Shown: one piece after another, positions 841 to 42,080 of the stretch | How positions within the stretch are numbered: the stretch's first letter is position 1 | How the letters are laid out: the number at the start of each line of letters is the position of its first letter | IMG/VR virus record: IMGVR_UViG_3300023174_000046 | Location: 62,001-126,000 of that record | Direction: 5' to 3' (one strand) | DNA length: 64,000 nucleotides | Program-made: the position numbers and the translations under genes | The notes under the pieces: model-generated | Seen by the model: only the letters and a program-made list of their open reading frames with translations | The model's database searches: none | What the model was told of the DNA's origin: nothing

Positions 841-1482
841 TTAAACACTCCAAGATGTACCTGCAAAAGGATTGCTCATGCCTTTGGTAACTTTGGTACC
901 AAGAGGTGCACCCATCTCAACGTTAATGCCTGCATTAACTACATTTACCTGCTCAAGTGATGGTTGTAATGTTGTTGCAATTGTATTGTTTGTAACCACA
1001 TGCTTATCAGAAGCATATGGGTTATGATCCGGTACATGTTGATAGCCTGAACTAACAATTGCAGAATTTTTATCATGCTCCCATACTTCAACCCTACTAA
1101 CCCAACATCTATTATTAGTTATGCCTCTTACATGCGCATCAGCTACATCATAACACCAGTCTGCTGTTCTCTCAATACCAACACCTTTGTCCATAACTCT
1201 TAGATCTGCAGCACCTAAGGTGTGTAAATTTTTAAAATGATCTAGCAAAGGATCATCAGCTGAAATGCATAATGTATGATCAAATTGATTTTCTAAGACT
1301 TGCTTAAGTTCCTTTAAACCACCAAAATCTACAACCCAGTTCTTTTCATCTAGATAATTACATTCAAACCAAAATTTTGCTATCAACCTGTATCCATGGA
1401 TATATTTGCAATGGCTGTCTGCTTTCCACTGTCTAAATGCACAACTTCCTAATTCAATTATCTTTGTACTTTCGTATTTCAT
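841..1482 (-). CDS. queD: 6-carboxy-5,6,7,8-tetrahydropterin synthase (QueD/PTPS family) with a ~65 aa low-complexity C-terminal tail
   Basis: SHCKYIHGY, WVVDFGGLKELK, FDHT, VEVWEHDKNSA motifs. Confidence 0.92.
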   Translation of the reverse strand: MKYESTKIIELGSCAFRQWKADSHCKYIHGYRLIAKFWFECNYLDEKNWVVDFGGLKELKQVLENQFDHTLCISADDPLLDHFKNLHTLGAADLRVMDKGVGIERTADWCYDVADAHVRGITNNRCWVSRVEVWEHDKNSAIVSSGYQHVPDHNPYASDKHVVTNNTIATTLQPSLEQVNVVNAGINVEMGAPLGTKVTKGMSNPFAGTSWSV

Positions 1483-2945: not shown

Positions 2946-3596
2946 ATGTCTAAGAAAGTATTAATTCCATACGCAAATCATAACCATCCTCGCTCTGAAC
3001 AAGAGAAGAATGAGATTATTGATCATGCCGCAAAAGCTTATGAAGCTTATCTTGATGCGCTTTGTATTGATTGGCGCAATGATCCAAATAGCTCCAACAC
3101 ACCTCACCGAGTTGCAAAGGCCTTTGTTGAAGATCTAGCTTCTGGTTGCTACAGCACACCACCCAAAGTAACTGCATTTGCTAATGTGGATCAATATGAT
3201 GGCATTGTGTGTCAAAATAATATTAAAGTAACTTCACTTTGTTCACATCATCATGCAGCGTTCACTGGTGTAGCACATGTAGCATACATACCTTCTCGTG
3301 ATGGTAAGGTCATTGGCTTGAGCAAGCTCAATCGCATTGTAGATTGGTTTTCACGCAGACCACAAGTGCAGGAGAATCTCACCATGCAAATTCACCAGCA
3401 TATTGATCAAGCTTGTGAATTAAACAATGGTGTGGCAGTTATGATTGAGGCAAAGCATACTTGTTGTTCCAATCGTGGCATCAAGCATGACTCTACTATG
3501 CGCACTGCGCGCATGTCTGGTGCGTTCTTGGATAACAATGACAACTCTCGTTCTGAGTTTTACAAGTTTATTGAATTTGCACAAAATAGGGATTAA
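2946..3596 (+). CDS. folE: GTP cyclohydrolase I
   Basis: TPHRVAKA, SLCSHHHAAF, GLSKLNRIV, RRPQVQENLT, AKHTCCSNRG; promoter TTGAAA-N16-TATATT at 2910-2937. Confidence 0.96.
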   Translation: MSKKVLIPYANHNHPRSEQEKNEIIDHAAKAYEAYLDALCIDWRNDPNSSNTPHRVAKAFVEDLASGCYSTPPKVTAFANVDQYDGIVCQNNIKVTSLCSHHHAAFTGVAHVAYIPSRDGKVIGLSKLNRIVDWFSRRPQVQENLTMQIHQHIDQACELNNGVAVMIEAKHTCCSNRGIKHDSTMRTARMSGAFLDNNDNSRSEFYKFIEFAQNRD

Positions 3597-3598
3597 GT

Positions 3599-4180
3599 GT
3601 GGACCCATATTATACACATAGACCCCACCTTACCAAGATATTAGAGCAGCTAGATTTTACTAAAACAGTTAGATGTGTAGAGTTTGGTTCAGGTGATGGC
3701 TCGGGAGAAGTTTTTAAACAGTTTACGGAGCGCTACCCAAATCTTAAAGTTGTTTGTCTTGAATCTGACAGGGAGTGGTTTAACAGAACATCAGTAAAGT
3801 ATCAATCAAATAATTATAGGTATAAATTTGTGGAAAATTGGACCAATACAATTAAAAGTATTAGTCCAGAAGAAGTATTTGACCTTGCTTTTATTGACAA
3901 TGGACCGACTTGGGATACACGCATTCAAATTCTGGAACAAATTAAAAATCAATGCAAGCATATCATTATTCATGATTATGATTATTATAATAAAGGCCAC
4001 ATGGGTTTAGCAGATGGTCTCAATCTTGAGTATTATGAAGCATACCGCAACACTGAGCATGATATCTATTCTGTAGGTGCAAATAGTTTTTTTGGTAAGT
4101 ATGCAAAAAATTTTATACTTGAGGCACATAGCACAGAGCTACCACCAACACTTGTATTAACAAATAAGACTTTAATTTAG
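3599..4180 (+). CDS. Class I SAM-dependent methyltransferase (possibly sugar O-methyltransferase)
   Basis: VEFGSGDGS motif I, acidic LESD, FDLAFIDNG, IIIHD; GTG start 2 nt after the folE stop. Confidence 0.7.
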   Translation: MDPYYTHRPHLTKILEQLDFTKTVRCVEFGSGDGSGEVFKQFTERYPNLKVVCLESDREWFNRTSVKYQSNNYRYKFVENWTNTIKSISPEEVFDLAFIDNGPTWDTRIQILEQIKNQCKHIIIHDYDYYNKGHMGLADGLNLEYYEAYRNTEHDIYSVGANSFFGKYAKNFILEAHSTELPPTLVLTNKTLI

Positions 4181-14688: not shown

Positions 14689-16490
14689 AAAAAATTATCT
14701 TTAACAAAATTTCAATAAAAAACTTTCTTTCTGTAGGAAGCGAGCCTGTCGTAATTGATTTTAAGACAGGGTTACATATTATTACAGGTCTTAATAAAGA
14801 TAAGGAAGACCGTCGTAATGGTGTTGGTAAATCTACTGTTGCTGATGCTATATACTTTGCTATTTTTGGTTCTACGTTGAGAGAGCTTAAGAAAGAGCAT
14901 ATTGTTAATAATACTAATAGAGAGAACTGTGAAGTTATCCTAGATTTTGATATTGAAGGATTTGATAGAAAAGATGAATATCAAATTATAAGAATGCTTG
15001 AACCGTCACGTTGCTATGTGTACAAGAACGGTGAAGACAAGACACGAGACAGCATTATTAATACTACTGAATATATTTTTGAAAAGATTAATTGTTCACC
15101 TGATATTTTTCAGAATTGTGTTATTATGACTGTTAATAATACTATACCTTTCATGGCAAAGAAGAAGATTGAAAAGCGAAAATTTATTGAAGGGATTTTT
15201 AATTTAGAAGTTTTTAGTACTATGTTGCAACGTCTTCGTGATGAATACAATGAATCAAAGAGAAACTTTGATATTGAATCAACAAAATGTACAGAGATTG
15301 AAAATAGCTTATCTCTACAGGTTACAGCAAAAGAAGTTTACAATAAAGAGCGTGACGCCAAAAGAGAGAAATATACCGGTCGTAAAGAAAGCAACATAAA
15401 GGAACTACAGCTACTTGACAAAAAAATAAATGAATTTACTGCTTTAGATATTAAGAAGATTGAGAAAGACATTAGCACACTTACAACAAAAGCTGAAAAA
15501 ATTGATCAAGAAATTAAAGTGTTGCGTGACAAGACTTCCTCATATCGCACACAGATTGAATTAAAAGAAAAAGACTACAAGCGAATTGGAACAGATAAAG
15601 ATGCTTGCCCTACATGTTTACGTGCACTAGAAGATAAAGATAAAAATCATATTAAAGAGGAGAAACAAAAAATTAAAAAAGAGATTAGTGATTTTGAAAA
15701 TAAGATCAACACTAATGTTGCAAAAGAAGAAGAGTCTTCTGCACTAGAGCTTAAGCTGTATGGAGCAGTAGAGAGCTTGAAGGGCAAGATTAATGCTTTT
15801 AATCTAGAGCAAAAAGAATTAGAGAGTATTAAAACTCGAATAAATCAATTAAATGTATGGCAAAAAGAGCTAGATATTGATCTCGCAGAACTTAGCAAGA
15901 CAAACAATCAACACGATACAAATATTGAAGATATTACAAAGCGACTTGAGGAAATAAAGAGTGTGCTTGAAAAGACAAAGATACATTTCAATATGCTTGA
16001 TGCTGTAAAATTTGTGTTATCTGAAGAAGGCGTAAAATCATATATTGTAAAAAAGATTCTTCAGCTCTTTAATAGCAAACTTGCTTATTATCTAAAGAAA
16101 ATGGATTCGAATTGCATTTGTATTTTTAATGAATATTTTGAAGAAGAGATTATTGATGAAAAGGGCAAACCATGTTCTTATTTTAATTTTAGTGGTGCAG
16201 AACGGAAGAATATAGATCTAGCATGTTTGTTTGCTTTTATGGATATAAGACGTTTACAAGGTAATGTCGCATTTAATTTTAGTGTGTATGATGAGCTGTT
16301 TGATTCATCTCTCGATGAAAAGGGTGTAGAGCTTGTACTGGGTATTTTACGAGAAAGAATTGAAAAATATAATGAATGTATTATGGTGATTAGTCACCGC
16401 AAAGAGAGTGTAAAATTTGCTTCAGGTGATATTATTTTTCTAGAAAAGAAAAACGGTATTACTAAACGTATTGAATACAGCGATTATTAG
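14685..16490 (+). CDS. gp46: Recombination ATPase subunit (Rad50/SbcC-like)
   Basis: KNFLSVG, NGVGKS, coiled coil with CPTC hook, FSGAE signature, DELFDSSLD, ISH. Confidence 0.95.
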   Translation: MKKIIFNKISIKNFLSVGSEPVVIDFKTGLHIITGLNKDKEDRRNGVGKSTVADAIYFAIFGSTLRELKKEHIVNNTNRENCEVILDFDIEGFDRKDEYQIIRMLEPSRCYVYKNGEDKTRDSIINTTEYIFEKINCSPDIFQNCVIMTVNNTIPFMAKKKIEKRKFIEGIFNLEVFSTMLQRLRDEYNESKRNFDIESTKCTEIENSLSLQVTAKEVYNKERDAKREKYTGRKESNIKELQLLDKKINEFTALDIKKIEKDISTLTTKAEKIDQEIKVLRDKTSSYRTQIELKEKDYKRIGTDKDACPTCLRALEDKDKNHIKEEKQKIKKEISDFENKINTNVAKEEESSALELKLYGAVESLKGKINAFNLEQKELESIKTRINQLNVWQKELDIDLAELSKTNNQHDTNIEDITKRLEEIKSVLEKTKIHFNMLDAVKFVLSEEGVKSYIVKKILQLFNSKLAYYLKKMDSNCICIFNEYFEEEIIDEKGKPCSYFNFSGAERKNIDLACLFAFMDIRRLQGNVAFNFSVYDELFDSSLDEKGVELVLGILRERIEKYNECIMVISHRKESVKFASGDIIFLEKKNGITKRIEYSDY

Positions 16491-17374
16491 TCTGAAGAAG
16501 TATAATTTCTATCGCCAACTGCTTGCGGTATAACTCTTCTACCAAATTCTCTTCGCGCAATATCCTCAATATCTGGCTCAAGTCCTGTTTCGAGAGCCTC
16601 TGGCTCTTTTGTTATGTCTTCAGGGTTAGCTAGCTTATAATAATCAACAGCTAGATCTACAAAGTTTTGAAAATAATCAAAATTATCTTTTGGATCAACC
16701 TTAAAAAACTCTTCTTTTTCTTTCTTATCCAACATATCTTCTGCTGTACTACGTGCTGCAGCTTCAATTTGTTTTCTTAGTTCTTCCGGATTGCTTGTTT
16801 CAAATGTATCAGACAATTCATCGTATACTCTTGGACTTATTTTATCATATTTGCCAAAATTTGGTGTTCCTGTTCTTGTAAAAATCTTTTCTGCTTCAAT
16901 GGTTGCAGGCACATCACTCTTTGATATTTCTTTATTTTTTGCTCCTGCTTCTACAGCCTTTTTAACTGCAGCTGGTGATGTGGCATTACCGCCTTCACCA
17001 TCTGTTCGTATAACATTAAGCAAGTTATCTGCAATACGAGCTGTATAACCAGCCTGAGTTTTGCCAAGCTTAAGCTCATTCTTAACAAGATCTATCAATT
17101 CAGCGCGAAACTTATCTTTGCTCCCCGGGTAATAAAGCTGATATTCAACACCATCAACTGTATGTGATGCAGGCTTAAAAAGTTTTGTTTTAATTGTATC
17201 AATTAGTCCCTTGACTTGATCATCAGATAAACCCTTAAAACCATAACCGCCACCTGCGCTTGCCCGTGGATCAGACGAGAAACCTAGATCACCTGGCCCA
17301 AAAACAGGTATTTCACTAATTAATTGTGTTTTTGCGTAAGCTTCAAAAATTAGCTTAGAGTCTTTATTATTCAT
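16487..17374 (-). CDS. Hypothetical late protein with capsid-targeting-like N-terminus
   Basis: MNNKDSKLIFEAY..LISE; TAAATA 8 nt upstream of ATG. Confidence 0.65.
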   Translation of the reverse strand: MNNKDSKLIFEAYAKTQLISEIPVFGPGDLGFSSDPRASAGGGYGFKGLSDDQVKGLIDTIKTKLFKPASHTVDGVEYQLYYPGSKDKFRAELIDLVKNELKLGKTQAGYTARIADNLLNVIRTDGEGGNATSPAAVKKAVEAGAKNKEISKSDVPATIEAEKIFTRTGTPNFGKYDKISPRVYDELSDTFETSNPEELRKQIEAAARSTAEDMLDKKEKEEFFKVDPKDNFDYFQNFVDLAVDYYKLANPEDITKEPEALETGLEPDIEDIARREFGRRVIPQAVGDRNYTSSD

Positions 17375-18656: not shown

Positions 18657-21233
18657 GTGTATAGGAATGCTGTCTACTTACCTAAGAATGAATGTGTGCG
18701 TGTGTACACATGGGATGCAAATGGCAGGCGAACGTTTTATGACGCAACTTATAGGCCCTACCTTTACATAGAAAGTAATAATGGATCTGATCTAAAGTCA
18801 ATCTTTAATACTAATCTAAAGAAAATTTCCTTTAAGACGCAATATGACCGCAATGAATATATCAAGCGTGGCGCCACGCGAATATTTGAAAACACACCAC
18901 CCATACAGCAGCATTTAATTGATTCATATTGGGAGAAGAACGAAGATAAAGATTTTAGTGAGAATCCGCTCAAGCTTTATTTGCTTGATATTGAAACTTA
19001 TAGCCCAGATGAGTTCCCAGTACCTGACCAAGCTAAACACACAATTAACATCATAACAGTCTACGACTCACTGCAACAGCATTATTATACATGGGGCCTT
19101 AAACCGTATGTCAAGAAGGAAAAAAATGTAACGTATGTAAAGTGTGATAGTGAGAGCGAATTACTTAAGAAATTTATCAAATTTATTGAAATGGATCATC
19201 CTGATATTCTTTCAGGTTGGAATTGTGAATTTTTTGATATACCTTATATTATTAATAGAATAAAAAACATATTAGGCGACGAAGAAGTATTAAAACTTTC
19301 TCCTGTATTGAAACTGTACCCACGGTCTATTAAGGGTAAGTTCGGACAAGATCAAGTAAGATGGCATATTGAAGGCATATCTGTTATTGATTATCTAGAC
19401 ATTTATAAAAGATTTTGCATGGTGCAGAGAGAGAGCTACAAGCTTGATAATATTGCTCAGATTGAATTAAATGAAAGCAAGGTCGATTACGGTGATACTA
19501 ATCTTTCTTCGCTAGCCGATGATAACTGGGAAACGTTTGTTGATTATAATATACAAGACGTAAAGATTTTAGTTAAGCTTGAAGATAAACTAAGATATCT
19601 CGAATTGCTTCGAATGCTTGCATACACAGGGTTAACTACATTTGAAGCGGCAATGGGATCACTGTCTGTTATTACAGGCGCTACTGCAATACGTGCGAGA
19701 TATAGGCAGCAGAGAATTCCTACATTCATCAGAAATGATACTAATAAAGCAAAAAATCCCGGAGCTTACGTGAGCGAACCACAACAAGGCTTTCAAGAGC
19801 ATATTGTATCATTTGATGCAAACAGTCTATATCCCAACACGATGATATCCCTCAATCTTTCACCCGAGACAAAGATGGGTAAAATTGAAAATATTGACAA
19901 AGATACAGGTAACGTTCTCTTTAGAGATGTCAATGGAACATCTTTCACTCTCTCGAGAGAAAAATTCGCACAGCTTATTAAAAAAGAACAATTATCTATA
20001 TCCAGATCAAAGGTTCTTTTTTCACAGAAAAAGAAAGGAATTATACCGGAGATTGTTGATAGGTATTATTCACAGCGAGTTGAGATTAAGCACGAACTCA
20101 AAAAGCTGAAGAAGGTACTCGCAACTCTTGATAAAAAAAGTCAGGAATATATTGATACACAAGCTGAAGTGAATAGATTAAACATCAAACAGCATACAAT
20201 AAAGATTTTTATTAATACGATTTATGGTTACTTTGGTAACAAGCATGCACCCATTGGTGATGATGATTTGGCTTCTTCAATTACTCTTACTGGGCAATCT
20301 GTTATTAAGCAGTGTAACGAATTGGTACGAAATTTTATTAAAGAAAAAATTAATATTGCGGAATTGCCAGTAGATCCTGTCATATATAATGACACCGATA
20401 GCGTATATGTTACGCTTAAGAACCTTGTAACCAATCTCAATGTACCAGTGTTAGATAAGAACAAGCATGTCACAAAAGAATATCACAAACTCGTGGATGA
20501 ACTTGAAGCCTATCTCAATAAGCATATTACTAAGTGGGGTACCGATTCATTGAATTCAACAGATTGTCGGTTTGTCTTTAAGCGCGAAGCAATTGCAGAT
20601 GTTGGTATTTTCTTGCAGAAAAAAAGATACATTCTTCACTTACTCGACGAAGAGGGCATACCTTGCGACAAATTTAAATACACCGGTGTTGAAGTTGTTC
20701 GAACAACAATGCCAAGAGCAATTAAACCACACGTTAAGAAGATTATTACAACAATGCTAATGTCAAAAAATCAAACCGAAACAAATAAAGTTTTAAATGA
20801 GACGTATGATATATTTAAAAATCTTCCTCTAGAAGATATATCTTTTGTGTCGGGTATTAAGAACTACGAAAAATATGCTGCACAGTGTGACAATTTTAGA
20901 GTAGTAAAAGGAATGCCTAACCATGTTAAGGCTGCATACTATCACAATTTCTTGCTTAAAAAACTCAATATCGATAAAAAATACGAAAGTATTAATTCGG
21001 GTGATAAAATAAGATTTTTTTATGTCCGCAAACCCAATCCGTACGGCTTAACATCAATCGCTTTCAAGTACTATTACCCGAAAGAATTTACAAACGTCTT
21101 TGAACCTGACTATGAGCTTATGTTTAACAAAATTGTATTTAGCGCAATAGAAAGGTTATATGACGCTGTGCAATGGAAAGCTATTGAACCTGGACAACAG
21201 GTACAATGTGATTTATTTGAATTACTATCTTGA
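18657..21233 (+). CDS. gp43: Family B DNA polymerase
   Basis: DIET (ExoI), GWN..FFDIPY, YN.QDV, SFDANSLYP, K...NTIYGYFG, YNDTDS, KKRY; promoter TTGTAA-N16-TATTAT-N6-GTG. Confidence 0.97.
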   Translation: MYRNAVYLPKNECVRVYTWDANGRRTFYDATYRPYLYIESNNGSDLKSIFNTNLKKISFKTQYDRNEYIKRGATRIFENTPPIQQHLIDSYWEKNEDKDFSENPLKLYLLDIETYSPDEFPVPDQAKHTINIITVYDSLQQHYYTWGLKPYVKKEKNVTYVKCDSESELLKKFIKFIEMDHPDILSGWNCEFFDIPYIINRIKNILGDEEVLKLSPVLKLYPRSIKGKFGQDQVRWHIEGISVIDYLDIYKRFCMVQRESYKLDNIAQIELNESKVDYGDTNLSSLADDNWETFVDYNIQDVKILVKLEDKLRYLELLRMLAYTGLTTFEAAMGSLSVITGATAIRARYRQQRIPTFIRNDTNKAKNPGAYVSEPQQGFQEHIVSFDANSLYPNTMISLNLSPETKMGKIENIDKDTGNVLFRDVNGTSFTLSREKFAQLIKKEQLSISRSKVLFSQKKKGIIPEIVDRYYSQRVEIKHELKKLKKVLATLDKKSQEYIDTQAEVNRLNIKQHTIKIFINTIYGYFGNKHAPIGDDDLASSITLTGQSVIKQCNELVRNFIKEKINIAELPVDPVIYNDTDSVYVTLKNLVTNLNVPVLDKNKHVTKEYHKLVDELEAYLNKHITKWGTDSLNSTDCRFVFKREAIADVGIFLQKKRYILHLLDEEGIPCDKFKYTGVEVVRTTMPRAIKPHVKKIITTMLMSKNQTETNKVLNETYDIFKNLPLEDISFVSGIKNYEKYAAQCDNFRVVKGMPNHVKAAYYHNFLLKKLNIDKKYESINSGDKIRFFYVRKPNPYGLTSIAFKYYYPKEFTNVFEPDYELMFNKIVFSAIERLYDAVQWKAIEPGQQVQCDLFELLS

Positions 21234-21263: not shown

Positions 21264-21650
21264 ATGAGCAAAACATTAAACGTTACTACATTCGTTGACC
21301 ATATTGGTCGCGTTATTCTTGGTGAAGTTGTATCTGATACAAAAGATACACTCAAGATTAAGAACCCTGCAATCGTCCATATTGGACAAAACCCACAAAC
21401 TGGTCAAATCCAGGTACAGACAATTCCTTATTTCTTTAGGGAATTTGTTGCTGCAAATGCACAAAAAGAAGGTACAACGTGGAACTTTGGCAAAGATAAG
21501 ATTGTTACTGGCGATGTTGAGCTTGATTCCAGGCTTATTGAGCAGTACGAGAAGCTCTTCAGTGGCGTACCACAAGCGGTAGCCCCTGCACCTCAGCAGA
21601 GATCTGCTGGTGCCGATAAAGCTGAAGTTATTAAGTTGTTTGACGAATAA
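21264..21650 (+). CDS. Conserved hypothetical protein (possibly Sm-like beta fold)
   Basis: Beta-rich GRVILGEV...LKIKNPAIV; own promoter TTGATT-N16-TAATAT-N6-ATG. Confidence 0.65.
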   Translation: MSKTLNVTTFVDHIGRVILGEVVSDTKDTLKIKNPAIVHIGQNPQTGQIQVQTIPYFFREFVAANAQKEGTTWNFGKDKIVTGDVELDSRLIEQYEKLFSGVPQAVAPAPQQRSAGADKAEVIKLFDE

Positions 21651-22801
21651 TGTCTCTCAATAAAGATATCCGGAGCGTACTTGATACTATTGATAGTATC
21701 AATCCACATGCAACCTACCTTTCGGAAGGCACTCTTTCAAAGGTAGACGGTTGGATTAGTACAGGTTCATATGTATTAAACGCTATTATTTCAGGTAGCA
21801 TCAATAAAGGTGTGCCTAGAAATAGAGTAACTTTGTTTGCAGGAGAGAGCATGACTGGTAAAACCTATGTTATTACTAAAATCCTCGCTAATGCTCAAAA
21901 GGAAGGGTTAGTTCCGGTTATTTTTGATACCGAAGGCGCCATTGATTCTGAATCAGCAGCTAAGCTCGGCCTTGACACAACAAAAGTAAAATATGTTCCC
22001 TGTTTTTCAATTGAAGAGACAAGAAACACAATTTATAATTTCCTTACAAAAGTTAAGGAAAATGGTCAAGAGGGAAAGTTTATTATTGCTATTGATTCTC
22101 TTGGTAATCTTGAGAATCAGCTCTCTTTAGATAGAATGACTAAAGAGAGCAGCTCAACTGATATGGGTACAAGAGCAAGAGCAATTAAGAGCTTGCTCAA
22201 GACGTGCACAAATATGTCACGCTTAACTAAGACAACATTCTTAATTACCAACCATACGTATGATGACCCAAGTGCAATGTATGAAAGTATGATCAAGCAG
22301 CAACCAGGCGGTAAAAGTGTTTGGTATTTGTCAGATGTAACAGTACAATTAGCACGTAAGCCTGAAAAAGATGACGGCGGTAAAGCAGTAGATAGCAAAT
22401 TAGCTGTTGGTCAACGCAATTACCCAGGTGTCATTCTCCGTGCACTTACTGTTAAGAATAGATTTGTCCGCCAATACCTACAAGGTGAAATGTATTTGAG
22501 TTTTGAGTCTGGTCTTAACAAATACTATGGTCTACTGGACCTTGCAGTTGGTTTCGGTATTGTTGTACAGAATGGTGCAACATATGCTCTTGCTGATGGC
22601 ACTAAGTTGGGATATTATAAGACATGGAGAACAGATGAAGAGCTTTGGAATACGAAATTGTTACCTGCTATTGAAGCTAAGATTAATATCGAGTGGCAGT
22701 ACGGTAATTCAGATGAAGTACCGGACGAACTACCTTCTGAAGAAGCACCAGTTGCAAAGAAAACAAAAGGTGCTAAACTGGCTGAAGATGTCGACGAATA
22801 A
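21650..22801 (+). CDS. uvsX: RecA-like recombinase UvsX
   Basis: WISTGSYVLN, AGESMTGKT, FDTE, IDSLGNL, DMGTRA, TNHTY, PGG. Confidence 0.95.
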   Translation: MSLNKDIRSVLDTIDSINPHATYLSEGTLSKVDGWISTGSYVLNAIISGSINKGVPRNRVTLFAGESMTGKTYVITKILANAQKEGLVPVIFDTEGAIDSESAAKLGLDTTKVKYVPCFSIEETRNTIYNFLTKVKENGQEGKFIIAIDSLGNLENQLSLDRMTKESSSTDMGTRARAIKSLLKTCTNMSRLTKTTFLITNHTYDDPSAMYESMIKQQPGGKSVWYLSDVTVQLARKPEKDDGGKAVDSKLAVGQRNYPGVILRALTVKNRFVRQYLQGEMYLSFESGLNKYYGLLDLAVGFGIVVQNGATYALADGTKLGYYKTWRTDEELWNTKLLPAIEAKINIEWQYGNSDEVPDELPSEEAPVAKKTKGAKLAEDVDE

Positions 22802-23525
22802 GAAACCTGCTATAGTAGTTCCTGTTAGTGGTGGTATGGATAGTACCGTGCTGCTATATAAAGCTGCAGGTGAGTTTGAAAAACTACACTGCATAAGCTT
22901 TGACTACAATCAAAAGCATAGAAAAGAATTAAATTATGCAACACTGCAAGTAGGCTTAATAAGAGATAAAATTGGTAAAGAAAATATTACTCACGATATA
23001 ATTGATCTATCTTTTTTTAAAGATATTGCTTCGACATCTGCTCTCACAAATACTAATATTGCTGTTGCAAAAGCTCGTAATGTAATGGGCGATCCACAAA
23101 CAGTAAATTATGTACCGTTTAGAAATTTAATGCTACTTAGCATATGTCTTGCACATGCTGAAAGTCATAACACTACAACAGTATGGCATGGGGCTGCGCA
23201 AGCTGATAGTATTGCTGGTTATTGGGATGGCAGTACTGAGTTTATTACCGAGCTCAATAAAGTGGCTAGTTTGAATCGTAGATTACGAATTAATGTGGAG
23301 GCGCCTTTATTAACAAAGTCAAAGTTAGATATTGTTACATTGGGTGTACACTTGAACGTACCCTTTAAAGATACATGGACATGCTATGAGGGTGAACAAG
23401 AAGCATGCGGTGAATGTACTGCATGCAGTCTTCGCTTACAAGGTTTTATTAAAGCAGGCTTTATTGATCCTATCCCTTATAAGAAAGAAATAGACTGGAA
23501 TTCTTTCAACTGTATTCCATTATAA
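22788..23525 (+). CDS. queC: 7-cyano-7-deazaguanine synthase (real start MSTNKK at 22788)
   Basis: SGGMDS PP-loop, FDYNQKH..E, YVPFRN, TWTCY..CGECTAC..R Zn site. Confidence 0.95.
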   Translation: MSTNKKPAIVVPVSGGMDSTVLLYKAAGEFEKLHCISFDYNQKHRKELNYATLQVGLIRDKIGKENITHDIIDLSFFKDIASTSALTNTNIAVAKARNVMGDPQTVNYVPFRNLMLLSICLAHAESHNTTTVWHGAAQADSIAGYWDGSTEFITELNKVASLNRRLRINVEAPLLTKSKLDIVTLGVHLNVPFKDTWTCYEGEQEACGECTACSLRLQGFIKAGFIDPIPYKKEIDWNSFNCIPL

Positions 23526-23529
23526 TAAA

Positions 23530-24180
23530 ATGTGTGGTATATTTGGAGCTACAGATAAAGAAAGATTTAAATCTCTTTATAATTTAAATAAGCAGAGAGG
23601 TAATTTTTCTTTTGGTTGCTGCTTCTTAACACAAGATAGACGGTCTCAGTATTGTGAATCTGCACCTGGTGAAGTTAATCTTGATGATTTAATGAGCGAT
23701 AATTACTACTATCTTCTAGGTCATACACAGGCCCCTACTTCATCAGCTCGTGGGTATGATAGAGCCACTTCACATCCTTTTGTGGATGGTGATTGGGTTG
23801 TTGCACATAACGGTGTATTATCTAATTTTGAAATCTTAAAGCAAAAATATGTACCAGAGCACGCAAACCCTGTCGATAGTAGCATCATACCAGTGCTCTT
23901 AAGCTATATGCAGGAAGATGATGAGGTACAGACAATTAAAAATGTATTAGAAGCTATTGAGGGAACTTATAGTTTGTGGCTCTTCAATCATGTTAGTAAA
24001 AATATCTATGTTGTACGGTGCGGTAGTACACTCTATGGTGATATTATTAAATGTGAGTTCTCATCATACCCAGATATTGGCTTGAGTGAACTTGATGATA
24101 ATGCTCTTTATTTGGTTACACAAGAGGGGTTAACAAAGGTCTCAGGATTTGATGGCAACAGCCCGTTTTTTATTATATGA
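23530..24180 (+). CDS. Stand-alone class II (Ntn) glutamine amidotransferase
   Basis: MCGIFG N-terminal nucleophile, RG, GHTQAPT, HPF, AHNGVL.NF, VDS. Confidence 0.88.
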   Translation: MCGIFGATDKERFKSLYNLNKQRGNFSFGCCFLTQDRRSQYCESAPGEVNLDDLMSDNYYYLLGHTQAPTSSARGYDRATSHPFVDGDWVVAHNGVLSNFEILKQKYVPEHANPVDSSIIPVLLSYMQEDDEVQTIKNVLEAIEGTYSLWLFNHVSKNIYVVRCGSTLYGDIIKCEFSSYPDIGLSELDDNALYLVTQEGLTKVSGFDGNSPFFII

Positions 24181-24851
24181 ATATTTGTATTTTTAGCTGT
24201 ACTACTAAGAGCGATGAGACACAGACAGATCTATATAAGAGTTGTTTAGAATTTGAGCATCTAGATGTGTATTTTAAGAAGGAAAACGCAGATGGGTTAT
24301 CTAAATCGTATAATAATTTTTTATATAGTAAGGAGGCTAGCGAATATGATATTGTTGTTTTTTGCCATGATGATGTTTTTATCGATGATCTTAAGCTAAA
24401 AAACAAATTACAAGCTGCAACTGACCTTGGTTACGATATTATAGGTCTTGCTGGCTGTGTTAATCCGAAAATTATAAGACCTGCACTATGGCATCTTATG
24501 GCAGGCGGATTTAATAGCAATAATTTAAGAGGAATTGTAAATCACTATCAGGATGAAACACGCGCGCATCATTTTGCAACAAATTTTGGACCTACACCTT
24601 CGCGGGTTGCATTATTAGATGGTCTTTTTCTTGCTGTTAACGTTGGAAAGGCAAAAGAGGTTGGATGGGGCTTTAATGAAAACTACAATTTTCATCACTA
24701 TGATATTGCCTCTTGTCTAGACGCAAATAATAAAAAATTAAAATTAGGCGTTTACCCTATAAATGTTATTCACTGCTCGCACGGGCTCCGATCTTTTGAT
24801 GACAACTTTAAGAATAGTGAAGATGCCTTTATGCGAGAATATTCTCGTTGA
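24177..24851 (+). CDS. GT-A fold glycosyltransferase-like protein
   Basis: GLSKSYN, VVFCHDDV (DxD-like), IIGLAG, LDGLFLA, FHHYD, H.S.G. Confidence 0.8.
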   Translation: MNICIFSCTTKSDETQTDLYKSCLEFEHLDVYFKKENADGLSKSYNNFLYSKEASEYDIVVFCHDDVFIDDLKLKNKLQAATDLGYDIIGLAGCVNPKIIRPALWHLMAGGFNSNNLRGIVNHYQDETRAHHFATNFGPTPSRVALLDGLFLAVNVGKAKEVGWGFNENYNFHHYDIASCLDANNKKLKLGVYPINVIHCSHGLRSFDDNFKNSEDAFMREYSR

Positions 24852-24881: not shown

Positions 24882-26216
24882 ATGCAAGACCGTGCTTTAG
24901 ATTTGGATTTCTTTGAGCATGTTGTTTTATATAAATCGCTTACTGACGAAAAATTTTTAGGCTCGATTGTAGATATTGTTAAGCCAGCTTTCTTTAAAGA
25001 CAAGAATATTAAGAGTATTTTTAGTATTATTAAAGAATTTTATATTAAAAATACCACAGTACCTACCTTAACTGAAATTAAGGCTTACTTGAGCACTGAT
25101 AAGCTTAAAGAAAGCTTCAAAGAATCAATTTCGAAATTTAAAGATATTGACAAAAACTTTAATGAAGAAGAACTTTACCGCAATACAGAAAGATTTTTAA
25201 GAGAAAAAGCTGTTTATACAACAATGCTTGAAGTTGCAGATAAATGCTCAAAAGGTGAGATCAATACTGCAGAAATTTTGGAAAAGTTTGATAGTTCTTG
25301 CAGTATTAATCTGTCAGTAGATCTTGGTATAGAGATACTTTCAAACTCACAGCTCATTGTTGATGATTTAAATAAAGTTGAAAGCTTTATTTCTACTGGG
25401 TACCCTTGGATTGATCAACGTATAGGTGGAGGCTTGCAAGAAAACGGCAGGTCTTTGTATGTTTTTGCAGGTGAAACAAATATTGGCAAGTCAATTTTTC
25501 TCGCTAACGTCGCTACTAATATTGCAAAACAAAATAAAACGGTTTTATTGATTTCACTAGAAATGCCTGAATTGATATATGCAAAACGACTTTCGTCTAA
25601 TATTACAAAAATTCCAATCTTTAGATTAAAGGGTGAACAGGATCAGCTCAAGATTGGCTTGGATGAATTTAATAGAAAAAACCCTAATGCCCGGATTTAT
25701 GTAAAAGAGTTTCCACCATCGACTATTTCACCCTTACAACTAAATGCATTTATTAAGAAGTTTATTGCAAAAGGAATAAAAGTAGATGCAATTGTATTAG
25801 ATTATCTCAATCTCATACACTCTCCTACAGGGACCAATTCATATGAAAGGGTAAAATATGTTACTGAAAAGATTCGAGCTTTGTCTTATATTTTTAATTG
25901 TCCTATTATTTCAGCAACACAATTAAATCGCTCTGGTTATAGTGAATCAGACCCATCTATAGCCACAATTAGTGAAAGCATTGGTTTAGCTGCGACTGCA
26001 GATGTTGTCATGAGTATTTTTCAGACAGATGAAGAAAGAGAGCTGGGAGTTATTCACTTAGGTATGATGAAAAATCGCTTTGGACCAAATTTTGGAAACG
26101 TTTTATTGAGAATAGATTACCCCACATTAACAATTTCACAAGATGATACTATAAATGATACTGACGAAAGCAATTCGTTGACGTCAACCCTCAAAGTATT
26201 AGCAGATAACAATTGA
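24882..26216 (+). CDS. gp41: Replicative DnaB-like helicase
   Basis: AGETNIGKS, SLEM, DYLNL, SATQLNRSG, SESIGLAATAD, KNRFG; promoter TTGATT-N16-TATTAT-N6-ATG. Confidence 0.95.
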   Translation: MQDRALDLDFFEHVVLYKSLTDEKFLGSIVDIVKPAFFKDKNIKSIFSIIKEFYIKNTTVPTLTEIKAYLSTDKLKESFKESISKFKDIDKNFNEEELYRNTERFLREKAVYTTMLEVADKCSKGEINTAEILEKFDSSCSINLSVDLGIEILSNSQLIVDDLNKVESFISTGYPWIDQRIGGGLQENGRSLYVFAGETNIGKSIFLANVATNIAKQNKTVLLISLEMPELIYAKRLSSNITKIPIFRLKGEQDQLKIGLDEFNRKNPNARIYVKEFPPSTISPLQLNAFIKKFIAKGIKVDAIVLDYLNLIHSPTGTNSYERVKYVTEKIRALSYIFNCPIISATQLNRSGYSESDPSIATISESIGLAATADVVMSIFQTDEERELGVIHLGMMKNRFGPNFGNVLLRIDYPTLTISQDDTINDTDESNSLTSTLKVLADNN

Positions 26217-39770: not shown

Positions 39771-42080
39771 ATGGCAAGAGTAATCCAAAGTCCCGGTGTA
39801 CAGATAAACGAATTTGATCAGTCATTAAGAGCAGCAACCAACGACACAACAAATGTATTAGTTGCTGGTTTTGCATCACAAGGTCCAACCTACGAACCAA
39901 TCGTGGTTTCAACACTTTCAGAATTTGAACAAATCTTCGGTCAACCATCAAATGGTGCCGAGAGATACTTTTATCACACTGCAAAGGCAGTATTAGCAAG
40001 TCCTGCTACAGTTTACGCTGGTAGAATTGCTTATGGCCCTGGCCTTGGTGACGGGTACGGTTCTAAATACTCAGCATTAGTATATCCAGTTCGCGGCAAG
40101 GTTGCAGGTACCGGTGATATACAAACAAATTTACAAATTATTAGCGGTAATGGCGATATGTATGTCTTGGGCAGACCAAACTTGGTTGAACTCTCAGACA
40201 CAGATTATCAAAACGTTTTAAATGGCAGCGCATTCACATGGTCTGCAACTTCTGACAGCGCCAATGGTGTTATTACTTCAATTAGTAATTTTGGTCAAGC
40301 AGGATTAATCATTTTAAACAAGCAAAAATATACCACCAATTCAAACTTTGAAGGTTACTATGTTGGCTTGATTGATAATACCACAGTTAATCCACAAGTT
40401 GATTACCGCGGTATCAATCAAGCTTATACTGTTAGCTTAACTGGTGGTAAGAATGGTGGCTTGAATTCAGGATACACACAACTGCTACCATCAAGACTTA
40501 ATTTTGCATTGAGTGCAACATTTGCAGGTATCGATGGTTCTGTATCACAAGATATGGAATTCACAACATTCAATATCGGCACTACCGCATATAGAGATTG
40601 CTTAAATCTTGGTGTATTCAGACTACGTCAAACAGTATTTTCACCAACTGTATTGACACTAAGCAAAGTTTTAGCTGAACCATATACAGGATCAATCAAC
40701 TACTACCGTCAACAATTTCCACAAAATGGTGGATCACCTCAAAGTTTCTTCATTGGTGATGTTGAAGACAGTTCCACCTCAATTCAAGTTTTAGTTAACC
40801 CTAATATCTCTAAGAGAGATTCAAGCACAAACAATTCTACTGATGCAGGTGACCCAAAAGTTGCTATCCGTGTTCTTGGTGCAGGCCTTCGTTATGCCTC
40901 AGAGTTAGACAGCGCCTTTACTGGTATATCACCTGCACAAGTTGATTCTTTTGTATCATCTGGGAATGGAATCGGTGATGCTGGTGCATTATTCCCACTT
41001 GGTACATACACACTAGATAATCCTTACACAAAGAGTATCGGTAATGTTCCAGGCAAAGTTAATAAGCTCTTACAAAAACTCGACAATTATGATGTTTACC
41101 CTCTAACATTGACAGTTGAAGGTGGTCTCGGAACAATTTATGCAAGCGCATCAGCTAATAATGATATCTTTGATGATTATAAGTATGTAACTGGTTACAA
41201 CGGATTATCATCATCCACTGGTATAACCGGTGATGCAAAAGTCTTGAGAGATGCATATGCAAGCGTATTTGAAGAATTCAGAGTATTTGCTCAAGATTCA
41301 CGCAAAGACCATATGTTTATTGCTGATGCACCTCTACCGATCTTTGTACAAGGTAGAAACACCAAGACAATTGATAGAAACGATACAAACTTTACATCCA
41401 ACATTTACTGGCCATTACGCAATGTGTTTGATCCAATCAATACAAGTTATGCTTGTGTGTATGCAAACTGCGCACGCGTTAATGATCCTGCTTCTAACTC
41501 ACAAGTTTGGGTACCATTCTCAGGTTTCGCAGCAAACTTAATGGCAAGAACTGATACAAACTTCCAACCATGGTTTGCCCCAGCTGGATTCAATCGCGGC
41601 AATGTTGCAGGTGCAGTTGATATTGCACTATATCCTAAACAAAAGCAGCGTGATCAACTGTACAAGATTAGTGTTAATCCAGTTGCATTCTTCCCTGCTG
41701 AAGGATTTGTCGTGTACGGTCAAAAGACACTACAGAGACAACCAAGTGCATTTGATCGTATCAATGTACGTAGATTGTTTATCAATCTTGAGACACTTGT
41801 ACGCAACACAGTTAAGAGCTTCATATTCGAGCCTAACACCCTCTTTACTCGTACACAAGTAATCAACACAATCACACCATTCTTTGAAAATGCAAAGAAT
41901 ACACAAGGCATATATGATTACTTGATCATTTGCGATGAAAAGAACAACACACCTTCAGTAATTGATGATAATACACTTGTTGTTGACATTTACATGAAGC
42001 CAACAAGAACAGCGGAGTATATCTTGGTTAACTTCTACGCAACGAAGACAAGTCAAGATTTCAACGAAATCATCGCATAA
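39771..42080 (+). CDS. gp18: Tail sheath protein
   Basis: SPGVQINE.D, IFG.P, PWFAPAGFNRG, RDQLY..SVNP, YGQKT, SAFDRINVRRL, FEPN, CDE.NNT. Confidence 0.96.
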   Translation: MARVIQSPGVQINEFDQSLRAATNDTTNVLVAGFASQGPTYEPIVVSTLSEFEQIFGQPSNGAERYFYHTAKAVLASPATVYAGRIAYGPGLGDGYGSKYSALVYPVRGKVAGTGDIQTNLQIISGNGDMYVLGRPNLVELSDTDYQNVLNGSAFTWSATSDSANGVITSISNFGQAGLIILNKQKYTTNSNFEGYYVGLIDNTTVNPQVDYRGINQAYTVSLTGGKNGGLNSGYTQLLPSRLNFALSATFAGIDGSVSQDMEFTTFNIGTTAYRDCLNLGVFRLRQTVFSPTVLTLSKVLAEPYTGSINYYRQQFPQNGGSPQSFFIGDVEDSSTSIQVLVNPNISKRDSSTNNSTDAGDPKVAIRVLGAGLRYASELDSAFTGISPAQVDSFVSSGNGIGDAGALFPLGTYTLDNPYTKSIGNVPGKVNKLLQKLDNYDVYPLTLTVEGGLGTIYASASANNDIFDDYKYVTGYNGLSSSTGITGDAKVLRDAYASVFEEFRVFAQDSRKDHMFIADAPLPIFVQGRNTKTIDRNDTNFTSNIYWPLRNVFDPINTSYACVYANCARVNDPASNSQVWVPFSGFAANLMARTDTNFQPWFAPAGFNRGNVAGAVDIALYPKQKQRDQLYKISVNPVAFFPAEGFVVYGQKTLQRQPSAFDRINVRRLFINLETLVRNTVKSFIFEPNTLFTRTQVINTITPFFENAKNTQGIYDYLIICDEKNNTPSVIDDNTLVVDIYMKPTRTAEYILVNFYATKTSQDFNEIIA

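What the first reader, a model, noticed from the sequence alone, without database searches (positions are those of the whole stretch)
22788..24851. QueC + stand-alone Gat + glycosyltransferase cassette wedged between uvsX and gp41: candidate novel 7-deazaguanine DNA hypermodification
Seen: queC, an Ntn amidotransferase and a GT-A protein are tightly linked inside the core replisome operon, and folE and queD lie at 0.8-3.6 kb. Established: FolE-QueD-QueE-QueC make preQ0. A fused Gat-QueC makes archaeosine (G+) in phages such as 9g, where DpdA inserts the base into DNA. T4-like phages place DNA-modifying transferases near uvsX/gp43. Inference: this is a split Gat/QueC producing G+ or a related base, and the co-transcribed GT may add a sugar, giving a glycosylated deazaguanine. 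No DpdA or QueE is visible in the window, so the insertion route is open.
Basis: partly seen in the sequence, partly recalled or inferred. Interest (0 to 1): 0.75.

Follow-up and report, generated by a model that had tools for sequence, protein, structure and literature searches.

The report
Deazaguanine DNA-modification genes in lake phage
The three genes are real. They belong to a complete, scattered gene set by which an uncultured freshwater T4-like phage most likely replaces guanine in its DNA with a preQ1-type 7-deazaguanine; the amidotransferase probably feeds nitrogen to QueC, and the role of the glycosyltransferase is still open.

Summary
Observation confirmed. queC (22788-23525), a 216-aa stand-alone Ntn glutamine amidotransferase (Gat, 23530-24180) and a 224-aa GT-A glycosyltransferase (24177-24851) lie packed between uvsX and gp41. 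folE and queD are also in the window.

Interpretation partly supported. The "open insertion route" is closed. The 217-kb genome encodes, outside the window:
- QueE, 140 bp before the window;
- a DpdA3 transglycosylase (43-48% identical to those of Flavobacterium phage immuto_2-6A and Campylobacter phage CPt10; its model matches only TGT structures);
- a DpdN-like formyltransferase;
- QueF.

This is the gene set of immuto_2-6A, whose DNA carries formyl-preQ1 in place of all G. Archaeosine is therefore unlikely.

The stand-alone Gat is not unique. Unannotated homologues follow QueC in Pseudomonas phage pf16 and in KVP40-like vibriophages, one of which contains dPreQ1. I infer that it is a glutaminase supplying ammonia to QueC. 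A complex prediction gives weak support (0.35 against controls of 0.00).

The GT is absent from 50,697 isolate genomes but is kept next to Gat throughout a large aquatic clade. Its acceptor is unknown, and a glycosylated deazaguanine remains speculative (about 0.2).

The parts
22788..23525 (+). queC, 7-cyano-7-deazaguanine (preQ0) synthase, 245 aa
   Evidence: PF06508 E 4e-55; TIGR00364 162 bits against a cut-off of 150. Closest isolates are KVP40-like vibriophages at 37% identity. Its start overlaps the uvsX stop by 14 nt.
23530..24180 (+). Stand-alone class II (Ntn) glutamine amidotransferase, 216 aa; inferred glutaminase partner of QueC
   Evidence: Conserved motifs: MCG N-terminus, RG, HxQAPT, HNG, D116. 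GATase_6/7. Profile hits to the N-domains of GlmS and PurF. Homologues follow QueC in pf16, nt-1 and 6E35-1b. Complex prediction with QueC: 0.35 against best control 0.00, weak support.
24177..24851 (+). GT-A fold glycosyltransferase-like protein, 224 aa, acceptor unknown
   Evidence: PF13712 E 6e-11. AF2 model pLDDT 91.8. Best structural matches are majastridin with UDP (TM 0.74) and StrF (TM 0.76). Invariant H-D-D and FHHYD motifs. No homologue in 50,697 phage isolate records. In every clade relative examined it lies just upstream of gp41, usually directly after Gat.
21650..22801 (+). uvsX recombinase, upstream flank of the cassette
   Evidence: RecA family, E 1e-14.
24882..26216 (+). gp41-type DnaB-like helicase, downstream flank of the cassette
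   Evidence: DnaB_C, E 9e-29.
2946..3596 (+). folE, GTP cyclohydrolase I (first pathway step)
   Evidence: PF01227 E 8e-48; best NCBIfam match is FolE, E 3e-49, 167.5 bits, below that model's cut-off of 202.
841..1482 (-). queD-like 6-carboxytetrahydropterin synthase (PTPS fold) with a C-terminal extension
   Evidence: PF01242 E 2e-17; TIGR03367 E 7e-9, below its cut-off.
18657..21233 (+). gp43 family B DNA polymerase (same replisome block)
   Evidence: DNA_pol_B and exonuclease domains. Only about 31% identical to any isolated phage.

Best explanation
The cassette is one of three scattered blocks of a complete DpdA3-type system for modifying DNA with 7-deazaguanine. It sits in an uncultured freshwater T4-like phage.

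Proposed pathway:
1. FolE, QueD and QueE turn GTP into 7-carboxy-7-deazaguanine.
2. QueC turns that into preQ0. The adjacent stand-alone Gat hydrolyses glutamine to supply the ammonia QueC needs (inferred).
3. QueF reduces preQ0 to preQ1.
4. DpdA3 swaps the base for guanine in phage DNA.
5. The DpdN-like formyltransferase makes formyl-preQ1.

The expected result is DNA shielded from restriction enzymes.

The GT-A protein, translationally coupled to Gat, is an addition specific to this clade. It binds a nucleotide sugar, but its acceptor is unknown. It may decorate the base further or act on something else.

Shown here: gene identities, homology to experimentally studied phages, and conservation. 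Inferred: the chemistry of the final base, the Gat-QueC partnership, and any role for the GT.
For: - Gene identities.
- QueE at genome 61102-61860 (minus strand): phmmer E 2e-31 to Cellulophaga phi47:1 QueE; Fer4_12.
- DpdA3 at genome 38139-38951: 43% identity, E 6e-66 to the immuto_2-6A DpdA; 48% to a CPt10 ORF. The AF2 model (pLDDT 90.9) has only tRNA-guanine transglycosylases among its top 50 PDB matches, TM 0.53-0.72.
- DpdN-like: 45% identity, E 6e-56.
- QueF: 46% to immuto QueF, with the catalytic Cys and the ESKSIKLY motif present.
- immuto_2-6A DNA is fully substituted with fdPreQ1, and CP220-type DNA fully with dADG (PMC10516641).
- The DpdA3-DpdN-...-QueF block is conserved in 53 IMG/VR loci.
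- All 7 contigs of at least 74 kb that carry DpdA3 also carry the GT. Whole-contig checks agree.
- Gat homologues follow QueC in pf16, nt-1, 6E35-1b and Vibrio phage 2.275.O. 6E35-1A DNA holds 15% dPreQ1 (PMC12028318).
- QueC+Gat complex: ipSAE 0.35 (runs 0.30-0.41) against best control 0.00. That mark was reached by 58 of 80 solved complexes and 2 of 110 mismatched pairs, and the tool rates it weak. The interface uses the conserved NSPFF tail and HNG loop of Gat and the Zn-Cys region of QueC.
Against: - No chemistry was measured; the base identity is extrapolated from phages at 43-46% identity.
- immuto_2-6A and CPt10 reach full substitution without any Gat, so Gat is not required.
- The complex score is in the weak range.
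- QueF scores 260 bits, below the 293-bit equivalog cut-off.
- The phage carries tRNA-Asp, tRNA-Asn and tRNA-Tyr, which are possible queuosine substrates.
- Conserved kinases and a GMP-reductase-like gene in the DpdA3 block have no place in the simple post-replicative model.
- Co-occurrence of the GT with the pathway comes from a single clade with conserved gene order, so it is not independent evidence.
Confidence: 0.6

Rival explanations
1. One reading: Gat and QueC act as a split Gat-QueC archaeosine synthase. The base goes into DNA as dG+ and the co-transcribed GT adds a sugar, giving a glycosylated deazaguanine.
For: - Gat lies next to QueC, and the Gat profile aligns with the Gat domain of 9g Gat-QueC at 95% probability.
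- The GT overlaps Gat by 4 nt and is kept with it across the clade.
- nt-1, which has the same QueC-Gat pair, does contain traces of dG+ (PMC6884629).
Against: - The genome has an apparently intact QueF and a DpdN-like formyltransferase, both of which need preQ0 or preQ1 rather than G+.
- In QueF-QueC-Gat phages the measured base is dPreQ1 (PMC12028318). In nt-1, dPreQ0 outweighs dG+ five to one, and the authors link dG+ to ArcS.
- The Gat is equally similar to GlmS and PurF.
- In relatives, unrelated genes separate queC from gat.
- No link between the GT and DNA was found.
Confidence: 0.1
2. The GT has nothing to do with nucleic acids. It glycosylates a protein, a small molecule or a cell-envelope component, and sits between Gat and gp41 only because the uvsX-gp41 interval is a hot spot for accessory genes.
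For: - The interval accepts unrelated inserts in relatives: heme oxygenase, bilin reductase, thioredoxin and a mobile acidic ORF.
- Out-of-clade family members lie in bacterial housekeeping contexts, next to a GT41-type gene, or fused to TPR repeats.
- The nearest structures are majastridin and StrF, not DNA glycosyltransferases.
- The genome has other glycan genes: a GT2, an RXYLT1-like gene and an epimerase.
- immuto_2-6A, pf16, nt-1 and CPt10 run deazaguanine pathways without this GT.
- Formyl-preQ1 offers no obvious sugar acceptor.
Against: - The GT is retained in every clade member examined, next to Gat and usually with overlapping stop and start codons, while its neighbours vary.
- It lies inside the replisome operon, where other T4-like phages keep their deazaguanine genes.
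- No ThyA-type or ThyX-type enzyme was found that could supply a hydroxymethyl or hydroxy pyrimidine as an alternative DNA acceptor.
Confidence: 0.4
3. Auxiliary tRNA role: the phage makes preQ1 to raise queuosine levels in host and phage tRNAs, not to modify DNA.
For: [quoted passage not shown]
- The phage carries tRNA-Asp(GTC), tRNA-Asn(GTT) and tRNA-Tyr(GTA).
Against: - A DpdA3 homologue is present. This is the protein family proposed as the signature of deazaguanine DNA modification and found in fully substituted phages (PMC10516641).
- A DpdN-like formyltransferase has no role in queuosine synthesis.
Confidence: 0.05
4. Nucleotide-level route: the deazaguanine is converted to a deoxynucleotide and incorporated by the phage polymerase while dGTP is depleted. 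DpdA3 plays only a minor or proofreading part.
For: - AAA_28 / deoxynucleoside-kinase-like proteins are conserved beside QueE and between DpdN and QueF. One is 30% identical to the immuto_2-6A 'thymidylate kinase'.
- A GMP-reductase/IMPDH-like gene and a DUF1599-like gene sit in the DpdA3 block.
- In one relative the GMP-reductase-like gene lies directly upstream of Gat-GT.
- Deazaguanine genes are embedded among replisome genes.
Against: - The authors who defined DpdA3 argue for post-replicative exchange in all known cases (PMC10516641).
- No phosphoribosyltransferase was identified here.
- The kinases may serve NAD or nucleotide salvage instead.
Confidence: 0.12

Closest known systems
[quoted passage not shown]
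   Same: All seven components have homologues here: DpdA3 43%, DpdN 45%, QueF 46%, and the neighbouring kinase 30%. The local order DpdA3-DpdN-...-kinase-QueF is the same.
   Different: - The host virus is a T4-like phage with a family B polymerase; immuto_2-6A has a family A polymerase.
- The genes are split into three blocks 20-47 kb apart.
- This genome has extra GMP-reductase-like and DUF1599-like genes, a twitch radical SAM, and the Gat and GT. The last two have no homologue in immuto_2-6A.
QueF-QueC-Gat clusters of T4-like phages pf16 and the KVP40/nt-1/6E35-1 group (DpdA2 type; PMC6884629, PMC12028318)
   Same: A stand-alone Ntn amidotransferase of 200-216 aa follows QueC, with full-length homology including the C-terminal NSPFF-like tail. 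QueF is present in pf16 and 6E35-1b but not in the nt-1 cluster. In pf16 the cluster abuts the replisome genes.
   Different: - Those phages use DpdA2 and reach only partial substitution (0.1-15% of G).
- They lack DpdN and the GT.
- Their Gat is annotated only as a hypothetical protein, and its role has not been studied in the papers read here.
Gat-QueC archaeosine synthase of phage 9g and archaea
   Same: A class II Gat and a QueC-type PP-loop ATPase are combined; remote homology of the Gat parts (hhalign 95%).
   Different: - Here they are two genes, not a fusion, and other genes separate them in relatives.
- QueC is canonical, above the QueC equivalog cut-off.
- QueF and DpdN are present.
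- The Gat is not specifically closer to the 9g Gat than to GlmS.
Campylobacter Firehammervirus (CP220/CPt10) dADG system
   Same: T4-like phage with DpdA3 (48% identical). QueC and FolE lie among the replisome genes, immediately upstream of gp43 and gp41 respectively.
   Different: No homologue of Gat or GT was found. According to PMC10516641 the base is ADG, made by a QueC variant.
Majastridin (PDB 2qgi/2nxv) and StrF, GT-A proteins structurally closest to this PF13712-type GT
   Same: Same compact GT-A fold (TM 0.74-0.76). Majastridin was solved with UDP bound. An acidic DxD-type motif is present.
   Different: About 16-18% identity. The function of majastridin is unknown and StrF belongs to an antibiotic pathway. 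Neither acts on DNA.

Membership tests
DpdA3-type 7-deazaguanine DNA modification system (preQ1/fdPreQ1 branch) | [quoted passage not shown] | tested here: met
   FolE, QueD and QueC are in the window. QueE is at genome 61102-61860.
DpdA3-type 7-deazaguanine DNA modification system (preQ1/fdPreQ1 branch) | A DpdA3-subfamily DNA transglycosylase with a TGT fold | tested here: met
   43-48% identity to the immuto_2-6A DpdA and to a CPt10 ORF. All top 50 structural matches are TGT enzymes. Pfam TGT misses this subfamily even in known carriers.
DpdA3-type 7-deazaguanine DNA modification system (preQ1/fdPreQ1 branch) | QueF nitrile reductase and DpdN formyltransferase | tested here: met
   QueF: TIGR03138 260 bits (below the 293 cut-off), catalytic Cys and QueF motif present, 46% to immuto QueF. 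DpdN-like: 45% identity, E 6e-56, adjacent to DpdA3.
DpdA3-type 7-deazaguanine DNA modification system (preQ1/fdPreQ1 branch) | Virion DNA actually contains the modified base | not testable with these tools
   Only assembled contigs of short-read metagenomes are available. No mass spectrometry or raw long-read signal.
Gat-QueC archaeosine (G+) synthase | Gat and QueC domains fused in one polypeptide | tested here: not met
   Separate ORFs 4 nt apart. In relatives 1.1-1.3 kb of unrelated genes separate them.
Gat-QueC archaeosine (G+) synthase | Specific sequence kinship with the Gat-QueC clade rather than canonical QueC or generic Gat | tested here: not met
   - QueC passes the canonical QueC equivalog cut-off.
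- QueC matches phrog_1550 (QueC) at E 3e-57 against E 1e-19 for the Gat-QueC phrog.
- phmmer of 9g Gat-QueC against the Gat gives E 0.26.
- hhalign E 2e-8 is similar to the GlmS match, E 4e-9.
Gat-QueC archaeosine (G+) synthase | Product is G+ | not testable with these tools
   Indirect evidence only: phages with the same split pair contain dPreQ1 or mainly dPreQ0 (PMC12028318, PMC6884629).
Class II (Ntn) glutamine amidotransferase | N-terminal catalytic Cys after Met, plus the Arg, Asn-Gly and Asp glutaminase residues | tested here: met
   R23-G24, H93-N94-G95 and D116 are invariant and the M-C-G start is invariant or nearly so across 18 homologues. GATase_6 28.9 bits against a cut-off of 27.
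Class II (Ntn) glutamine amidotransferase | A partner synthase domain that accepts the ammonia | tested here: inconclusive
   There is no fused domain. QueC is the recurrent neighbour in four phage lineages. Complex score 0.35 against control 0.00, rated weak.
GT-A glycosyltransferase (Pfam PF13712, Glyco_tranf_2_5) | GT-A Rossmann-like fold with a DxD-type metal and nucleotide-sugar site | tested here: met
   PF13712 42.9 bits against a cut-off of 27. Model pLDDT 91.8. TM 0.74 to the UDP-bound majastridin structure. H64-D65-D66 invariant or nearly so.
DNA base glycosyltransferase (as in T-even phages and other hypermodifying phages) | Acts on a modified base in DNA, or is related to a known DNA glycosyltransferase | tested here: inconclusive
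   - No sequence homologue among phage isolates.
- No DNA glycosyltransferase ranks above generic GT-A matches.
- No ThyA-type or ThyX-type enzyme that could make a hydroxylated pyrimidine acceptor.
- Only position and co-inheritance speak for this role.

The most novel reading that the evidence does not exclude
The clade-specific GT-A enzyme, translationally coupled to the QueC-associated Gat, adds a sugar to a preQ1-type 7-deazaguanine, either in DNA or at the base or nucleotide stage. This abundant group of freshwater and marine T4-like phages would then carry a glycosylated purine analogue in its DNA, a kind of modification not described in the literature searched here.
Probability: 0.2. 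Interest if true: 0.85.

Novelty: new variant of a known kind. Interest (0 to 1): 0.55.

Why it matters
1. **Ecological reach.** DpdA3-type full-replacement deazaguanine systems are so far known from a handful of isolates. Here the system appears in a large, widespread clade of uncultured aquatic T4-like phages: 53 IMG/VR loci, hundreds of metagenomic homologues, and several independent lake studies. This bears on how these phages escape restriction. It also bears on how well their DNA is recovered by sequencing.
2. **An overlooked component.** A stand-alone glutamine amidotransferase recurs next to QueC in several T4-like lineages, including cultivable ones (pf16, the KVP40 group). A glutamine-dependent QueC is a simple hypothesis that can be tested in those phages.
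3. **A candidate for new chemistry.** The GT is a defined, conserved candidate for a further, unknown step.

Tried and rejected
- **Pfam TGT (PF01702) and DUF6610 (DpdA4) on the whole genome:** negative. The TGT model also failed on CPt10 and nt-1, which are known to carry DpdA3 and DpdA2, so that negative was discarded.
- **Pfam Radical_SAM search for QueE:** found two unrelated radical SAM proteins and missed QueE. QueE was found only with a phage QueE query.
- **DpdA1 (9g), the phi47:1 DpdA and DpdA2 (nt-1) as queries:** no hit.
- **The ORF between queD and folE (1762-2493) as a possible QueE or DpdA:** rejected; it is a low-complexity Q/A/P-rich protein.
- **blastn of the cassette against phage isolates:** nothing.
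- **GT against isolates by tblastn:** nothing.
- **Fusion partners of GT relatives:** only TPR repeats.
- **Out-of-clade GT contexts:** uninformative for DNA.
- **5-hydroxymethyl or 5-hydroxy pyrimidine as the GT acceptor:** no ThyA or ThyX homologue found. This tool's sensitivity is limited, as the first two items show.
- **Sequencing runs:** only assembled short-read contigs, so no base-level signal of modification. Lake metatranscriptomes hold short pieces of relatives' queC, gat and GT (80-95% alike), and one 243-nt piece bridges uvsX and queC. This is weak, because DNA can be present in such libraries.
- **Whether the DpdN-less subclade keeps the GT:** could not be tested; those contigs stop before the replisome block.


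Full report
**What is there**

The window is bases 62001-126000 of a 217,413-bp IMG/VR virus record that CheckV rates as complete. Near-identical sequence occurs in lake-water and freshwater metagenomes from several studies.

The phage is T4-like: it has gp43, uvsX, gp41, uvsY and gp23. It is far from every cultured phage. Its polymerase is at most about 31% identical to any isolate's, and blastn of the cassette finds nothing.

At the flagged coordinates four genes are packed head to tail:

| Gene | Coordinates | Junction | Evidence |
|---|---|---|---|
| uvsX | 21650-22801 | – | RecA family |
| queC | 22788-23525 | 14-nt overlap with uvsX | PF06508 E 4e-55; above the QueC equivalog cut-off |
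| Gat (216 aa) | 23530-24180 | 4-nt gap after queC | Ntn amidotransferase starting MCG; GATase_6/7 |
| GT (224 aa) | 24177-24851 | ATGA overlap with Gat | PF13712, E 6e-11 |
| gp41 | from 24882 | 30 nt after GT | DnaB_C |

folE (2946-3596) and a QueD-like gene (841-1482, minus strand) are also in the window.

**The rest of the pathway lies outside the window**

A control showed the TGT negative to be worthless: the same search also misses the known DpdA3 of Campylobacter phage CPt10 and the known DpdA2 of Vibrio phage nt-1.

Searching all six reading frames with phage proteins gave the following.

- **QueE** is at genome 61102-61860 (minus strand), 140 bp before the window. The match to Cellulophaga phi47:1 QueE is E 2e-31, and a Fer4_12 domain is present.
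[quoted passage not shown] That phage's annotated cluster pointed to the missing genes.
- **DpdA3.** The ORF at genome 38139-38951 is 43% identical (E 6e-66) to the immuto_2-6A DpdA. It is 48% identical to an ORF of CPt10.
- **DpdN.** The next ORF is 45% identical (E 6e-56) to the immuto formyltransferase, which is DpdN.
- **Kinase.** A kinase-like ORF is 30% identical to immuto's "thymidylate kinase".
- **Order.** QueF follows in the same relative order as in immuto_2-6A.

An AlphaFold model of the DpdA3 candidate (pLDDT 90.9) has only tRNA-guanine transglycosylases among its 50 best PDB matches, with TM 0.53-0.72.

According to PMC10516641, DpdA3 is the subfamily linked to complete replacement of G. 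In immuto_2-6A all G is replaced by 7-(formylamino)methyl-7-deazaguanine (fdPreQ1), and in CP220-type Campylobacter phages by ADG. The insertion route is therefore settled at the level of homology, and the predicted base is preQ1-derived.

**Conservation**

- The order uvsX-queC-...-Gat-GT-gp41 holds in every relative examined, down to about 50% gp41 identity. This covers contigs of 93-229 kb from lakes and from other metagenomes whose habitat was not determined.
- The interval is plastic. Relatives insert heme oxygenase plus a bilin reductase, thioredoxin, or a fast-evolving acidic ORF on the opposite strand, between queC and Gat or between Gat and GT.
- The DpdA3-DpdN-(GMP-reductase-like)-DUF1599-kinase-QueF block next to gp23 is conserved in 53 IMG/VR loci. 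One subclade lacks DpdN.
- All seven contigs of at least 74 kb that carry DpdA3 also carry the GT. Whole-contig comparisons show all three blocks together.
- All of this comes from one clade with conserved gene order. The co-occurrence is real, but it is not independent evidence of shared function.

**The amidotransferase**

Its glutaminase residues are invariant: M-C-G, R-G, H-N-G and Asp. As a glutaminase domain alone it needs an acceptor enzyme.

It is not unique to this clade. Unannotated proteins of 200-216 aa, homologous over their full length and sharing the C-terminal NSPFF-like tail, follow QueC directly in several isolates:

- Pseudomonas phage pf16 (gp77; gene order QueF-QueC-Gat-pyrophosphohydrolase-gp43);
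- Vibrio phage nt-1 (ORF392);
- Vibrio phage 6E35-1b;
- Vibrio phage 2.275.O.

Measured bases argue against this pair being an archaeosine synthase. DNA of 6E35-1A, a close relative of 6E35-1b, contains 15% dPreQ1 (PMC12028318). nt-1 DNA contains mainly dPreQ0 with traces of dADG and dG+ (PMC6884629).

By profile comparison the Gat is no closer to the Gat domain of 9g Gat-QueC (E 2e-8) than to GlmS or PurF (E 4e-9 and 2e-7).

From my own knowledge of the enzyme's published biochemistry, QueC uses ammonia to convert the carboxylate through the amide to the nitrile. The simplest inference is that Gat supplies that ammonia from glutamine.

A complex prediction of QueC with Gat scored 0.35 (three runs, 0.30-0.41) against 0.00 for the best of three controls. 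In the tool's calibration that mark was reached by 58 of 80 solved complexes and 2 of 110 mismatched pairs, and the tool itself rates a score in this range as weak. The interface involves the HNG loop and conserved C-terminal tail of Gat and the Zn-Cys region of QueC.

immuto_2-6A and CPt10 have no Gat. It is therefore an accessory, not a requirement.

**The glycosyltransferase**

- The model is confident (pLDDT 91.8) and has a GT-A fold.
- The best structural matches are majastridin with bound UDP (TM 0.74) and StrF (TM 0.76).
- H-D-D and FHHYD motifs are invariant or nearly so.
- No homologue exists in 50,697 phage isolate records, nor in immuto_2-6A, nt-1, CPt10 or phi47:1.
- The family is nevertheless large in metagenomes: 363 close relatives, and 3,073 cluster representatives by profile search. 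Most atlas clusters are viral.
- Outside the clade, relatives lie in bacterial housekeeping contexts, next to a GT41-type gene, or fused to TPR repeats.
- One relative places the GMP-reductase-like gene of the DpdA3 block directly upstream of Gat-x-GT. This is a small extra link between the blocks.
- No ThyA-like or ThyX-like gene was found that could provide a hydroxylated pyrimidine acceptor. The sensitivity of that search is limited.

Position and co-inheritance favour a role in the modification pathway. Formyl-preQ1 offers no obvious acceptor, and nothing else ties the enzyme to DNA. I put a nucleic-acid role at roughly 0.2-0.35 and an unrelated role at about 0.4.

**Mechanism proposed**

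GTP is converted by FolE, QueD and QueE to CDG. QueC, with Gat delivering glutamine-derived ammonia, makes preQ0. QueF reduces it to preQ1. DpdA3 exchanges it for G in phage DNA, and the DpdN-like enzyme formylates it.

- Shown here: gene identities, homology and conservation.
- Inferred: every chemical step in this phage.

The conserved kinases, the GMP-reductase-like gene and the DUF1599-like gene are not explained by this scheme. They keep a nucleotide-level route alive as a minor rival.

The tRNA-queuosine reading is weakened by DpdA3 and DpdN. The phage does carry tRNA-Asp, tRNA-Asn and tRNA-Tyr.

**Comparison and novelty**

The system is a member of the DpdA3/DpdN kind described in 2023. 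It is new in several respects:

- it sits in a T4-like backbone and is spread over three blocks;
- it carries a QueC-associated stand-alone Gat, shared with pf16 and KVP40-type phages but not discussed in the papers I could read (PMC6884629, PMC10516641, PMC13329287);
- it carries a clade-specific GT.

In other T4-like phages, deazaguanine genes also sit among or directly upstream of the replisome genes (CPt10; pf16). I rate it a new variant of a known kind, of moderate interest, with a speculative but testable high-interest reading for the GT.

Noticed in passing
outside the window: genome 41584-42903 (L018:5584-6903): A 439-aa twitch-domain radical SAM protein (NF033640, 301 bits) sits between the kinase and QueF in this genome only. 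It is absent at that position in 53 related loci. Relative G010 has four paralogues elsewhere.
   Followed up: partly
L008:1779-3015 and L009:3193-4429: In distant relatives a heme oxygenase and a ferredoxin-dependent bilin reductase (a pigment-synthesis pair) are inserted between queC and gat.
   Followed up: partly
window 16487-17374 (-); L009:5100-5975, L021:5061-5960, L022:6684-7565: A fast-evolving, acidic ORF of about 290-300 aa on the opposite strand, sharing an N-terminal motif, occupies different positions inside the cassette in relatives. In this genome it lies upstream of gp43. No family match.
   Followed up: partly
L112:41-2854: In one relative the GMP-reductase/IMPDH-like gene lies directly upstream of Gat-orf-GT-gp41. 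In this genome it lies in the DpdA3 block.
   Followed up: no
outside the window: genome 60351-61097 (L017:10351-11097, minus strand) and 41027-41614: Two AAA_28 / deoxynucleoside-kinase-like proteins are conserved beside QueE (this one also has a KH domain) and between DpdN and QueF. Their role in the pathway is unexplained.
   Followed up: partly
window 3599-4180 (+): A 193-aa ORF directly after folE has a class I SAM-methyltransferase-like glycine motif (weak Methyltransf_25 match, E 0.01).
   Followed up: no
window 1762-2493 (-): A low-complexity 243-aa ORF rich in Q, A and P lies between queD and folE. No family match.
   Followed up: no
outside the window: genome 25059-32095 and 175844-190839: Sixteen tRNA genes, including Asp(GTC), Asn(GTT) and Tyr(GTA), the anticodon class that carries queuosine in bacteria.
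   Followed up: no
outside the window: genome 52190-58630 (L017:2190-8630): A group of glycan-related genes lies near QueE: a GT2 glycosyltransferase, an RXYLT1_C-like protein and an NAD-dependent epimerase/dehydratase.
   Followed up: no
L007:6593-9546: In one relative the gp41 helicase match is split by about 1.7 kb, suggesting an intein, an intron or a homing-endonuclease insertion.
   Followed up: no
relative G010, whole contig (L090-L098): Mosaic divergence. DpdA3, the GMP-reductase-like gene, FolE and PhoH are 80-82% identical to this genome, while uvsX, gp41, gp43, queC, Gat and GT are only 45-62% identical.
   Followed up: no
L027:8254-8460: A relative encodes a ribosomal protein S21 homologue between gp41 and gp32.
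   Followed up: no
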